Shown one piece after another: positions 19,382 through 21,424 of a stretch of DNA of 64,000 nt. The position numbers and the translations under genes were made by a program. The first letter of the stretch is position 1. Each line of letters opens with the position of its first letter. Under the pieces are notes generated by a model. It ran no database searches. It saw nothing but the letters and a program-made list of their open reading frames with translations, and was not told the DNA's origin. The stretch is from Octopus bimaculoides (lineage: Eukaryota), in the NCBI RefSeq assembly GCF_001194135.2, contig NC_068997.1, forward strand, positions 46,224,698-46,288,697, given 5' to 3'.

Positions 19382-19525
19382 TTGCAAAAACTGTGCAGCA
19401 AAGAAGGAATGGCTGAATACACCATTTACATCTGAGGAACCAGGTCTCTCTCTCCTAGACATCTTGCTTAACTTCTCATCTGTTATGCCACCATTTGAAT
19501 GAATTTTAGGTAACTTCATCTCATT
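19382..19525 (+). pseudogene. Inverted, decayed partial duplicate of MTRR exon 8 plus its 5' splice site
   Basis: Hand alignment to the reverse complement of ~21229-21370 gives about 16 differences in ~143 nt, including two CGA>TGA stops and a 1-nt insertion. Includes ttttag|gtaacttcat. Confidence 0.92.
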
Positions 19526-19554
19526 TTCTCTTTAACCCCAGCCTCCCATTAGTT

Positions 19555-20075
19555 TAACTCTCTACATTCAGATTACTCTGTCAATTATAATGCTTATTTA
19601 TTCGCATAGTTTTGAATTAATCATGCATGATCTCATAGTTTTGATATTTCGACGATGTGAGGACTTTCGAGCGAGATCGTTGCCAGTGCCCCTGGACTGG
19701 CTCTTGTGCGGGTGGCACATAAAACACACCATTTTGAGCGTGGCCGTTGCCAGTACCGCCTGACTGGCCTTCGTGCCGGTAGCACGTAAAAGCACCCACT
19801 ACACTCTCTGAGTGGTTGGCGTTAGGAAGGGCATCCAGCTGTAGAAACTGCCAAATCAGATTGGAGCCTGGTGTAGCCATCTGGTTTTACCAGTCCTCAG
19901 TCAAATCGTCCATGGAAAGCGGATGTTAAACGACGACAACGATGATAATGATGTGATCGTCAATTTTTAGAATGACATTGTAAGGTAGGTGTGAGAGGGC
20001 TGATCTGGTTAGTTTGAAAATAAAACAAGTTGAATATTTGGGTCTTATATGACTGGTTTGAATGCTAAAAAGTTA
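19555..20075 (+). mobile_element. piggyBac-like MITE interrupted by a family C SINE (~19655-19950, minus)
   Basis: The two MITE halves match the intact copy at 33261-33483. The insert carries the ccatggaaagcggatgttaaacgacgac end typical of family C. Confidence 0.75.
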
Positions 20076-20159
20076 AGGGACATGTGTTGTGAGCAAACAG
20101 TGAAGAGGAAGTGAGGAAGAGACACAGCGTCACTGGCTTTCTCTCTCACACATACACAC

Positions 20160-20202
20160 CTTGCGACAGAATAAGGCCTTGGCTGCAATCTGGGAAGAAG
20201 TT
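20160..20202 (-). CDS. MTRR: MTRR coding exon 9 (43-nt exon, FAD-binding RxYS motif)
   Basis: ttgtag|AA [13 protein letters not shown] AG|gtgtgt. Phases 1 to 2 fit both neighbours. Confidence 0.93.
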
Positions 20203-21243
20203 CTACAATAGTGAAGAAAGAAGGAGGATATATATTAGGACAGAGAATATCTATTTAGACTATATTTTATATTTATATTTTAAATGCAGTCATGAGAAAA
20301 ACAATACCAAATATTTTAATAAGAGAATGAGTTAAAATTTATAGTTTACATATTTTTTACAAGTGTGTGTGTGTGTGATATTAGCAAATGTGTAGGTACA
20401 CATGTAGGTCTATGAATGGTAGATAGATAGATAGATAGATTGTTGGCACTCCGTCGCTTACGACATCGAGGGTTCCAGTTGATCCGATCAACGGAACAGC
20501 CTGCTCGTGAAATTAACGTGCAAGTGGCTGAGCACTCCACAGACACGTGTACCCTCAACGTAGTTCTCGGGGATATTCAGCGTGACACAGTGTGACAAGG
20601 CTGACCCTTTGAATTACCGGCACAACAGAAACAGGAAGTAAGAGTGAGAGGAAGTTGTGAAAGAGTACAGCAGGGTTCGCCACCATCCCCTGCCGGAGCC
20701 TCATGGAGCTTTTAGGTGTTTTTACTCAATAAACACTCACNNNNNNNNNNNNNNNNNNNNNNNNNNNNNNNNNNNNNNNNNNNNNNNNNNNNNNNNNNNN
20801 NNNNNNNNNNNNNNNNNNNNNNNNNNNNNNNNNNNNNNNNNNNNNNNNNNNNNNNNNNNNNNNNNNNNNNNNNNNNNNNNNNNNNNNNNNNNNNNNNNNN
20901 NNNNNNNNNNNNNNNNNNNNNNNNNNNNNNNNNNNNNNNNNNNNNNNNNNNNNNNNNNNNNNNNNNNNNNNNNNNNNNNNNNNNNNNNNNNNNNNNNNNN
21001 NNNNNNNNNNNNNNNNNNNNNNNNNNNNNNNNNNNNNNNNNNNNNNNNNNNNNNNNNNNNNNNNNNNNNNNNNNNNNNNNNNNNNNNNNNNNNNNNNNNN
21101 NNNNNNNNNNNNNNNNNNNNNNNNNNNNNNNNNNNNNNNNNNNNNNNNNNNNNNNNNNNNNNNNNNATATATATATATATATATATAGACAGTGAGAGAA
21201 AGTGCATGTAAAATGTAGTTAAATAATAATGCAATGAAGTTAC

Positions 21244-21424
21244 CTAAAATTCGTTCAAATGGTGGCATAACAGATGGGAAGTTGAGTAAGATGTCCAGTA
21301 GAGAGAGACCTGGTTCTCGGATGTAAGTGGTGTATTCACTCATTCCTTCCTTGCTGCACAGTTCCTGCAGTCGTCGCTTCTCCTGCTCATCACTTGCATA
21401 GTCAACGAGCATCCGCAACAAAGC
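21244..21424 (-). CDS. MTRR: MTRR coding exon 8
   Basis: gcag|ALLRMLVDYASDEQEKRRLQELCSKEGMSEYTTYIREPGLSLLDILLNFPSVMPPFERIL G|gtaact. EKRRLQELCSK is identical to human. Confidence 0.95.

What the first reader, a model, noticed from the sequence alone, without database searches (positions are those of the whole stretch)
19382..21370. Inverted copy of MTRR exon 8 in the next intron: a ready-made editing-complementary sequence
Seen: 19382-19525 is an opposite-strand copy, about 89% identical by hand alignment, of the last ~127 nt of exon 8 plus its donor and ~15 intron nt, about 1.7 kb downstream in the pre-mRNA. Because it includes intron sequence it came from DNA or unspliced RNA. It abuts an RTE scrap. 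About half the codon differences are synonymous and two are CGA>TGA, consistent with an old non-coding copy. Inference: exon and copy can form a ~140-bp duplex covering coding sequence and the 5' splice site. Exon A residues at 21340 (AGT, Ser>Gly) and 21287 (TTA, silent) would face C, the A:C mismatch ADARs prefer. This would be a route by which local exon duplication creates recoding sites or modulates exon 8 splicing.
Basis: partly seen in the sequence, partly recalled or inferred. Interest (0 to 1): 0.78.

Follow-up and report, generated by a model that had tools for sequence, protein, structure and literature searches.

The report
Inverted decayed exon copy in MTRR intron
A decayed, backwards copy of about 150 bases of a coding exon of the methionine synthase reductase gene lies two introns downstream and could pair with the real exon in unspliced RNA, but nothing available here shows that this pairing is used for RNA editing or splicing.

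Summary
The inverted repeat is real. Window 19383-19536 (+) is a copy, 88-89% identical, of the last 126 nt of MTRR coding exon 8 (21424-21244, minus strand) plus the splice donor and about 26 intron nt. The copy carries two CGA>TGA stops and a 1-nt frameshift.

One correction matters. A conserved 43-nt microexon (20202-20160, encoding the RPYS FAD motif) lies between exon 8 and the copy. The copy is therefore in the intron after next, and the two arms bracket that microexon.

The N gap (20741-21166) lies inside intron 8. Exon order, strand and phase are continuous across it. The copy shares a contig with exons 9-13, so only the spacing is uncertain, not the inverted relation.

The copy sits in a 236-nt insertion inside an interspersed repeat that is contiguous in two other copies. 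There is no poly(A) and no target-site duplication. This points to a local DNA-level templated insertion.

Folding predicts a 140-bp duplex (-215 kcal/mol; shuffles -46±6) that persists in the 2.4-kb pre-mRNA fold. The substitution pattern looks neutral.

Editing or splicing effects could not be tested, because no RNA data or orthologous loci were reachable. The most likely reading is a neutral relic and an incidental substrate for promiscuous ADAR editing.

The parts
21244..21424 (-). MTRR coding exon 8. It is 181 nt, enters in phase 0 and leaves with 1 extra nt. It encodes ALLRMLVDYASDEQEKRRLQELCSKEGMSEYTTYIREPGLSLLDILLNFPSVMPPFERIL. The acceptor is CAG and the donor is GTAACT.
   Evidence: A distant homologue (L001) has an exon of the same length and with the same boundaries.
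21218..21369 (-). Source arm of the inverted repeat: the last 126 nt of exon 8, the 5' splice site and about 26 nt of intron 8.
19383..19536 (+). Decayed copy of the source arm. It reads in the MTRR sense on the + strand, so it is antisense within the MTRR pre-mRNA. It has two TGA stops (19433, 19500), a 1-nt insertion (19436) and a retained GT (19510-19511).
19317..19382 (.). 66 nt of unknown origin on the left side of the copy. It is part of the same insertion.
   Evidence: No match elsewhere in the window. No significant homology to the 5' part of exon 8 or to intron 7 (p about 0.2).
19537..19552 (.). 16-nt filler between the copy's terminal TTTAAC (19531-19536) and the host repeat's TTTAAC (19553-19558).
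19236..19316 (+). Left part of the host interspersed repeat 'X', interrupted by the 236-nt insertion.
   Evidence: X copies 24575-24886 (+) and 1387-1124 (-) are contiguous across this point.
19553..19660 (+). Continuation of repeat X to the right of the insertion.
19661..19947 (.). Second, unrelated insertion in X: a SINE-like multi-copy element with an internal 60-nt direct repeat.
   Evidence: family D2; copies at 38223-38348, 26762-26645 and elsewhere. No tRNA or Rfam match.
19948..20076 (+). Last part of repeat X.
   Evidence: matches 33356-33487 and 24780-24879.
20160..20202 (-). 43-nt microexon 9 (AACTTCTTCCCAGATTGCAGCCAAGGCCTTATTCTGTCGCAAG, encoding (E)[13 protein letters not shown](S)). 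It has a polypyrimidine tract plus AG acceptor and a GT donor. It lies between the two arms.
   Evidence: A distant homologue has a 43-nt exon in the same phase.
20741..21166 (.). Assembly gap inside intron 8, of estimated length. Its left edge is a 305-nt repeat that is 92% identical to 4602-4299. Its right edge is (TA)n.
18785..18989 (-). MTRR exon 10. Its acceptor lies 393 nt downstream of the copy in the transcript.

Best explanation
This is a neutral relic of a small, local, DNA-level inverted duplication.

Origin (inferred):
- A break inside an interspersed repeat in MTRR intron 9 was repaired with a 236-nt patch.
- About 154 nt of that patch were templated, in reverse orientation, from the 3' end of exon 8 and the start of intron 8, roughly 1.7 kb away.
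- Filler of 66 nt on one side and 16 nt on the other came with it.

Since then (shown in sequence): the copy has decayed as non-coding DNA, with two stops, a frameshift and AT-biased transitions.

What it can do (predicted by folding, not observed): it is antisense within the MTRR pre-mRNA. It can therefore pair with exon 8 and its 5' splice site in an imperfect 140-bp helix. That helix would loop out intron 8, the 43-nt microexon 9 and 623 nt of intron 9.

Most likely consequence (inferred from established ADAR behaviour on long imperfect duplexes): incidental, promiscuous A-to-I editing at low level, mainly on unspliced nuclear RNA. A selected, site-specific recoding or splicing switch is less likely.
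For: - The inverted repeat is real and far above chance.
- It is the only one of 8 inverted pairs of at least 80 nt within 5 kb in the window that touches an exon. Exon 8 is the only MTRR exon with a second copy.
- The copy is dead as coding sequence: TGA x2 and a +1 frameshift.
- 6 synonymous against 7 non-synonymous differences, and 9 of 12 transitions run GC>AT towards the copy in a 37% GC window, both at CpG-containing CGA codons.
- Pair-preserving (G:U) transitions are 5 of 12, p = 0.77, so there is no sign of selection for pairing.
- Insertion context: two other copies of repeat X run straight through the point where 19317-19552 is inserted here. There is no poly(A) and no target-site duplication, and a TTTAAC motif is shared by the donor end and the host.
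- Duplex: 140 inter-arm pairs, -215 kcal/mol against -46±6 for shuffles.
- All 140 pairs are kept in the minimum-energy fold of the 2435-nt pre-mRNA, with mean pairing probability 0.86. 117 pairs are kept after intron 8 is removed.
- Literature: clusters of editing arise in long dsRNA formed by nearby inverted copies. Octopus shows the strongest such signal, and such clusters are rare in coding sequence (PMC5625713).
Against: - No RNA evidence of any kind was available, so neither editing nor its absence is shown.
- The neutrality tests rest on only 17 differences and have little power.
- Differences could not be polarised, because no outgroup DNA was reachable.
- 88% complementarity has persisted together with two A:C mismatches, which is also what a young functional editing-complementary sequence (ECS) could look like.
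- The origin is an inference. One X copy (33256-33484) begins exactly at the insertion point, so X may be a composite of two elements and the junction may have another history.
- The TTTAAC motif lies 16 nt from the junction, not at it.
- The origin of the 66-nt segment is unknown. It could lie in unread sequence.
Confidence: 0.7

Rival explanations
1. The copy is a functional editing-complementary sequence. It pairs with exon 8 and directs ADAR to particular adenosines, such as A21340 (Ser>Gly) and A21287 at A:C mismatches, giving regulated recoding of MTRR.
For: - A stable exon-intron duplex is predicted in the context of the whole pre-mRNA and survives removal of intron 8.
- The A:C mismatches are at the stated positions.
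- A:C is the opposing base ADARs edit best (established knowledge).
- The arm spacing of about 1.7 kb is within the range at which inverted repeats are edited (established knowledge; PMC5625713).
Against: - A21340 has a 5' G, the least favoured neighbour.
- A helix of 140 bp with perfect runs up to 29 bp predicts promiscuous editing, and 22 of the 37 duplexed exon adenosines would recode.
- There is no excess of pair-preserving substitutions.
- No MTRR entry or flavoprotein-domain entry was found in the held octopus recoding table. That file was truncated, so this is weak evidence.
- MTRR is a housekeeping enzyme, outside the neural and cytoskeletal classes enriched for recoding (PMC9989829).
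Confidence: 0.1
2. The duplex acts on splicing. It could mask the exon 8 donor, or it could loop out the 43-nt microexon 9 and so tune intron retention or microexon skipping. Skipping shifts the frame and removes the RPYS FAD-binding motif, which would lower MTRR output.
For: - The arms bracket the microexon and cover the exon 8 donor.
- Complementary sequences flanking an exon are known to favour skipping or back-splicing (established knowledge).
- Microexons are intrinsically hard to splice (established knowledge).
Against: - There is no transcript evidence.
- The downstream arm is transcribed at least 1.7 kb after the donor, so co-transcriptional U1 binding and intron 8 removal may come first.
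- The copy decays like neutral DNA.
- A constitutive loss-of-function isoform of an essential cofactor-repair enzyme offers no obvious benefit.
Confidence: 0.07
3. The copy is an assembly artefact: a false duplication or a mis-oriented piece near the 426-N gap.
For: A gap lies between the arms, and the scaffold has 12 gaps in 64 kb.
Against: - The arms differ by 12% and by two indels, far more than read error or haplotype difference.
- The copy is 1.2 kb from the gap edge.
- It is embedded in unique context on the same contig as exons 9-13, whose strand and order fit exon 8 on the other side of the gap.
Confidence: 0.03
4. The copy has the same (non-)function as in the best explanation but a different origin. 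The exon fragment was captured or transduced by a transposable element, the reader's 'RTE' or repeat X, rather than laid down by break repair.
For: - The copy is embedded in an interspersed repeat.
- One X copy starts exactly at the junction.
- RTE-type elements lack poly(A) tails, so the absence of a tail does not exclude them (established knowledge).
Against: - Two X copies are contiguous through the site.
- The sequence next to the copy (66 nt) is not what lies next to the source, so this is not a simple read-through transduction.
- There are no RT or endonuclease remnants nearby.
- The donor is only 1.7 kb away, and no other X in the window carries the fragment.
Confidence: 0.1

Closest known systems
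Exon-intron ADAR substrates with an intronic editing-complementary sequence (GRIA2 Q/R type; intronic ECS sites in Pinto et al. 2014, PMC4053846)
   Same: An intronic element in the same pre-mRNA is complementary to coding sequence and must pair before splicing. An A:C mismatch is present at a candidate site.
   Different: - Here the helix is about 140 bp and near-perfect, not a short imperfect hairpin.
- It lies beyond an intervening exon.
- It is visibly a duplicate of the exon.
- No editing has been observed.
Hyper-edited dsRNA from nearby inverted interspersed repeats (IR-Alu type; Porath et al. 2017, PMC5625713)
   Same: Two oppositely oriented copies, 88% alike and about 1.7 kb apart in one transcription unit, give a long imperfect duplex. 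Promiscuous clustered editing is expected.
   Different: One arm is a coding exon with its splice donor and the other is its private duplicate, not two members of a repeat family. Such clusters are reported to be rare in coding sequence.
SLC9A6 editing site created by two inverted LINE insertions (Pinto et al. 2014, PMC4053846)
   Same: It is an example of a new exon-editing substrate born when an inverted repeat arose in a gene.
   Different: In SLC9A6 the edited exon is itself an exonised LINE, and editing and conservation are documented. Here the exon is ancient and the function is unshown.
Hairpin RNA genes born by inverted duplication of their target genes (plant MIRNA genes, e.g. bioRxiv 10.1101/682591 listed; Drosophila hpRNAs, from my own knowledge)
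   Same: A partial inverted duplication of a coding sequence creates a dsRNA with built-in complementarity to that gene.
   Different: Those hairpins have both arms duplicated and are diced into small RNAs. Here the second arm is the working exon itself, within the same pre-mRNA.

Membership tests
Site-selective ADAR substrate with intronic ECS | An intronic sequence in the same pre-mRNA forms a stable duplex with the exon. | tested here: met
   140 pairs and -215 kcal/mol against -46±6 for shuffles. The pairs are kept in the 2435-nt fold with mean probability 0.86.
Site-selective ADAR substrate with intronic ECS | A-to-I editing is observed at defined exon adenosines. | not testable with these tools
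   No RNA reads were available. No MTRR record was found in the held papers or tables, and two key papers are not held.
Site-selective ADAR substrate with intronic ECS | Editing depends on the ECS, shown by deletion or mutation. | not testable with these tools
   This needs a minigene or a genome edit.
Site-selective ADAR substrate with intronic ECS | The pairing is maintained by selection, shown by conservation or by compensatory or wobble-biased change. | tested here: inconclusive
   5 of 12 transitions preserve pairing (p = 0.77). The copy carries stops and a frameshift, which is irrelevant to pairing. There are only 17 differences and no orthologous locus was reachable.
Hyper-edited inverted-repeat dsRNA | Two oppositely oriented similar copies lie within a few kb in one transcript. 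| tested here: met
   The arms are at 19383-19536 and 21218-21369, and both lie inside the MTRR transcription unit.
Hyper-edited inverted-repeat dsRNA | The duplex is long (over 100 bp) and nearly perfect. | tested here: met
   140 of 152 nt are paired, and the longest perfect run is 29 bp.
Hyper-edited inverted-repeat dsRNA | Clusters of A>G mismatches are seen in RNA. | not testable with these tools
   No RNA data were available.
Local templated inverted insertion (break repair or template switching) | The insertion site is uninterrupted in related sequence (an empty site). | tested here: met
   X copies 24575-24886 and 1387-1124 are contiguous where 19317-19552 is inserted. These are paralogous, not orthologous, empty sites.
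Local templated inverted insertion (break repair or template switching) | The donor lies nearby on the same molecule and was copied from DNA. | tested here: met
   The donor is about 1.7 kb away and the copy includes the splice donor and intron bases.
Local templated inverted insertion (break repair or template switching) | There is microhomology at the junctions. | tested here: inconclusive
   TTTAAC ends the copied segment and begins the host repeat, but 16 nt of filler separate them. The left junction cannot be judged, because the origin of the 66 nt is unknown.
Retroposed or transposon-transduced fragment (RTE) | The fragment is contiguous with an element terminus, has target-site duplications, and has RT or endonuclease coding remnants nearby. 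| tested here: not met
   There is no target-site duplication and no tail. There is no Pfam match in the flanking ORFs. The insertion is internal to X. Whether X is RTE-derived could not be tested, because no repeat library was available.
Assembly false duplication | The copies are near-identical and lie at a contig edge or gap. | tested here: not met
   Divergence is 12% with 2 indels. The copy is 1.2 kb from the gap and on the same contig as exons 9-13.
Methionine synthase reductase (MTRR) | The best match is to MTRR rather than to other diflavin reductases, with the order flavodoxin, FAD, NADPH domains. | tested here: met
   Human MTRR 2qtl scores 382 bits against 219 bits for cytochrome P450 reductase. 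The exon series 33035 to 16947 on the minus strand covers human residues 30-725 (the query was recalled from memory, and the C-terminal 398 residues were confirmed against the PDB sequence).

The most novel reading that the evidence does not exclude
A local inverted duplication of a coding exon has created, in one step, an ECS that ADAR actually uses in vivo. It would give reproducible recoding of MTRR exon 8, and/or it would control use of the exon 8 donor and inclusion of the 43-nt RPYS microexon. That would be a caught-in-the-act example of how exon-editing substrates are born in an editing-rich lineage.
Probability: 0.12. Interest if true: 0.65.

Novelty: new member of a known kind. Interest (0 to 1): 0.4.

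Why it matters
The evolutionary origin of the dsRNA structures that guide A-to-I recoding is poorly documented. Most known long substrates come from pairs of interspersed repeats and lie outside coding sequence.

This case is unusual in two ways. One arm is a working coding exon with its splice donor. The other arm is a datable private duplicate.

If RNA data showed editing or splicing effects, it would be a clean natural experiment. It would give the age of the structure, the decay of its pairing, and the cost of 22 potential recoding positions and a bracketed essential microexon.

If no effect is seen, it shows that a 140-bp exon-intron duplex can persist in an essential gene without consequence. 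That would be informative about how co-transcriptional splicing shields exons from ADAR.

As it stands, this is a well-characterised structural curiosity, not a demonstrated mechanism.

Tried and rejected
- Cross-species or independent copies of the locus:
  - A protein search with the exon 8 peptide found only two distant fragments, at 64% and 58% identity.
  - Exact look-ups of two window ORFs found nothing.
  - A 23-nt exact pattern shared by exon and copy found nothing in metagenome contigs.
  - The one distant locus recovered (L001, unknown organism) served only as a control. It has the same 181-nt exon and 43-nt microexon and no inverted copy within 6 kb.
- Literature on MTRR editing:
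  - No paper combines the terms.
  - The held octopus recoding table, which is truncated, has no MTRR or flavoprotein-domain entry.
  - Two key cephalopod editing papers are not held.
  - No precedent for an exon-derived inverted duplication acting as an ECS was found in two searches.
- Extension of the homology to the 5' part of exon 8 or to intron 7: rejected (p about 0.2), although the 66-nt segment contains a polypyrimidine tract followed by AG.
- Origin of the 66-nt and 16-nt fillers within the window: none found.
- Known RNA families or tRNA-derived heads in 18500-21700: none.
- RT or endonuclease remnants that would support 'RTE': none.
- Assembly artefact: rejected because of the divergence and the contig context.
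Full report
**The observation**

The sequence at 19200-21600 contains the claimed inverted repeat. The repeat finder reports two abutting arm pairs, offset by a single-base indel:
- 19437-19525 with 21228-21316 (89 nt, 91% complementary);
- 19383-19436 with 21316-21369 (54 nt, 87%).

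A gapped local alignment joins them into copy 19383-19536 (+) against 21369-21218 read on the minus strand. That gives 135 identities in 154 columns (87.7%) with two 1-nt indels. BLAST gives 88.5% over 148 nt at E = 2e-46, and 89.0% over the 127 exon columns. This is far beyond chance.

It is the only one of eight inverted pairs of at least 80 nt within 5 kb in the window that touches a coding exon. No other MTRR exon has a second copy in the window.

**The gene and the exon**

The minus strand between 33035 and 16947 carries a series of exons that align to human methionine synthase reductase residues 30-725. The query for that search was recalled from memory, so it was only a lead.

The C-terminal 398 residues assembled from these exons were then searched against the PDB. 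They hit human MTRR (2qtl) at E = 3.9e-113 (382 bits), against 219 bits for the best cytochrome P450 reductase, and the alignment is end to end. The gene is MTRR.

The duplicated exon is 21424-21244. It is 181 nt, with a CAG acceptor and a GTAACT donor, and it starts in phase 0 and leaves one extra base.

**The correction: a microexon between exon and copy**

The tblastn search also picked up [11 protein letters not shown] at 20254-20162. Inspection shows a 43-nt exon at 20202-20160. It has a polypyrimidine tract and AG in front and GTGTGT behind.

It joins exon 8 (phase 1) to exon 10 (18989-18785) in frame, giving ...[38 protein letters not shown].... This stretch aligns without a gap to human ...[23 protein letters not shown].... 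It holds the R-x-Y-S FAD-binding motif of the ferredoxin-NADP reductase superfamily (established knowledge).

A distant MTRR locus recovered from a public assembly (L001, 64% identical in exon 8) has an exon 8 of exactly 181 nt and a separate exon of exactly 43 nt in the same phase. The microexon is therefore real and old.

In transcript order the layout is:
- exon 8;
- intron 8 (21243-20203, nominally 1041 nt, containing the gap);
- microexon 9;
- intron 9 (20159-18990, 1170 nt), with the copy 623 nt into it and 393 nt before the exon 10 acceptor.

The copy is not in the next intron. The two arms bracket an essential microexon.

**The gap**

N runs in the window are listed. The relevant one, 20741-21166, lies wholly in intron 8, so reading frame across it is not an issue. 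The exon phases on either side fit, and no MTRR residues are missing, so no exon hides in it.

The copy, microexon 9 and exons 10-13 all lie on one gap-free stretch (14674-20740). Exon 8 and the upstream exons lie on the next stretch (21167-29060). Strand and order of the exons agree on both sides. The antisense relation of the copy to the gene is therefore established by the contig that carries it. Only the spacing (1,682-1,702 nt between arms, 426 of them estimated) is uncertain.

The gap edges are a 305-nt repeat, 92% identical to 4602-4299, and a (TA)n run. Both are ordinary causes of gaps.

A false duplication is not credible. The arms differ by 12% and by indels, and the copy is 1.2 kb from the gap.

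**State of the copy**

Read in the exon's frame, the copy has TGA in place of both CGA codons (exon 21319 and 21253) and a 1-nt insertion at 19436.

Of the 13 substitutions in the exon part, 6 are synonymous and 7 are not. I read this.

Twelve of the 17 substitutions overall are transitions. Nine of those run G or C in the exon to A or T in the copy, in a window of 37% GC. The K2P distance is 0.12.

This fits a copy decaying without constraint while the exon keeps its protein.

Homology does not extend to the 5' 55 nt of the exon or into intron 7.

**Where the copy sits and how it probably arose**

The flanks of the copy belong to an interspersed repeat that I call X. Segments 19236-19316, 19550-19660 and 19948-20076 match 24575-24886, 33256-33484, 1387-1124 and 55873-55681. 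In two of these copies (24575-24886 and 1387-1124) the sequence ...CTATCATAC|TTTAACCCTTTAGCAT... is contiguous. Here, 236 nt (19317-19552) are inserted at that point.

The insert consists of:
- 66 nt with no match in the window;
- the 154-nt exon/intron copy;
- 16 nt of filler.

The copied segment ends in TTTAAC, which is also in the donor intron at 21223-21218. X resumes with TTTAAC 16 nt later. There is no poly(A), no target-site duplication, and no RT or endonuclease remnant in the neighbouring ORFs. A separate SINE-like element is inserted at 19661-19947.

I infer a local DNA-level event, in which a break in X was repaired with a patch partly templated, in inverted orientation, from 1.7 kb away. 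Retroposition or transposon transduction seems less likely.

The caveats are these:
- One X copy starts exactly at the junction, so X could be composite.
- The empty sites are paralogous, not orthologous.
- The microhomology is not flush with the junction.
- Whether X is an 'RTE scrap' could not be tested.

**What the RNA could do**

Co-folding the two arms gives 140 inter-arm pairs out of 152 nt (6 of them G:U), perfect runs up to 29 bp, and -215 kcal/mol against -46±6 for shuffled partners.

In a fold of the whole 2435-nt stretch from exon 8 to the exon 10 acceptor, with N treated as unpaired, the minimum-energy structure keeps all 140 pairs. The mean probability that an exon-arm base pairs with the copy arm is 0.86. 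After removal of intron 8 in silico, 117 pairs remain. These are equilibrium predictions. Co-transcriptional splicing could pre-empt them.

However, A21340 follows a G, the least favoured 5' neighbour for ADARs (the preference is established knowledge).

The duplexed exon part holds 37 adenosines, and 22 of them would recode if edited. A long, nearly perfect helix is the classic substrate for promiscuous rather than site-selective editing. Published surveys link clustered editing to nearby inverted copies. They find the strongest signal in octopus, and find it rare in coding regions (PMC5625713). They also regard most recoding inside hyper-edited clusters as a by-product (PMC9989829).

**Is there any sign of selection for the pairing?**

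Half of all transition types in the copy would keep pairing through G:U. Observed are 5 pair-preserving transitions out of 12 (p = 0.77). That gives no signal, but little power either.

**What could not be done**

No RNA reads, no editing-site record for this gene, and no orthologous or independent assembly of the locus were reachable. The species itself could not be confirmed.

**Verdict**

The feature is real and more precisely described than before. It is a dead, inverted, partial duplicate of exon 8 plus its splice donor, lodged in a repeat in intron 9, with the capacity to form a 140-bp helix that brackets the RPYS microexon.

The best-supported reading is a neutral relic that may be incidentally hyper-edited in nuclear RNA (confidence about 0.7). 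A selected editing or splicing function remains possible (about 0.1-0.15 in total) and is cheap to test with RNA-seq. I found no documented case of an exon-derived inverted duplicate serving as an ECS in the held literature. A positive result would therefore be a nice first, but as it stands this is a new member of the known class of intragenic inverted repeats.

Noticed in passing
window 20160-20202 (-): A 43-nt microexon of MTRR encodes the RPYS FAD-binding motif. Its length and phase are conserved in a distant homologue (L001 10533-10575). A reader without tools could easily miss it, and so could gene callers.
   Followed up: yes
window 19236-20076; also 24575-24886, 33256-33484, 1387-1124, 55873-55681: An unclassified non-coding interspersed repeat family ('X', at least 310 bp, copies 77-84% alike) is present five times in 64 kb. 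One copy begins exactly at the point where the exon fragment is inserted in another.
   Followed up: partly
window 19661-19947; related 38223-38348, 26762-26645, 738-622, 57298-57353 and others: A very abundant SINE-like element with an internal 60-nt direct repeat (19665-19724 and 19732-19791, 77%). It has no tRNA or Rfam match.
   Followed up: partly
window 20440-20740 and 4299-4602: A 305-nt repeat, 92% identical and in inverted orientation, abuts the left edge of the 426-N gap. Together with (TA)n on the right edge (21167-21188), it probably explains why the assembly broke there.
   Followed up: no
window 21509-21760: Intron 7 contains a CCA/CCG-rich low-complexity tract (families D1 and D3). 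It gives long His/Pro-like or Val-rich open frames on both strands and is probably a decayed microsatellite.
   Followed up: no
window 8913-9212 (+) and 6384-6638 (-): ORF fragments match the hAT transposase C-terminal dimerisation domain (PF05699, E 2e-6) and the STPR repeat domain (PF21107, E 1e-6). They lie downstream of MTRR.
   Followed up: no
window 7332-7847 (-): A 171-aa ORF with a hydrophobic, signal-peptide-like N-terminus has no Pfam match. It may be the first exon of the neighbouring gene downstream of MTRR.
   Followed up: no
window 19349-19366: The 66-nt filler to the left of the copy ends in a polypyrimidine tract followed by AG (TCATCCTCTCTACTCAG|G). It looks like a splice acceptor on the + strand, but it has no detectable homology to the real exon 8 acceptor region.
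   Followed up: partly
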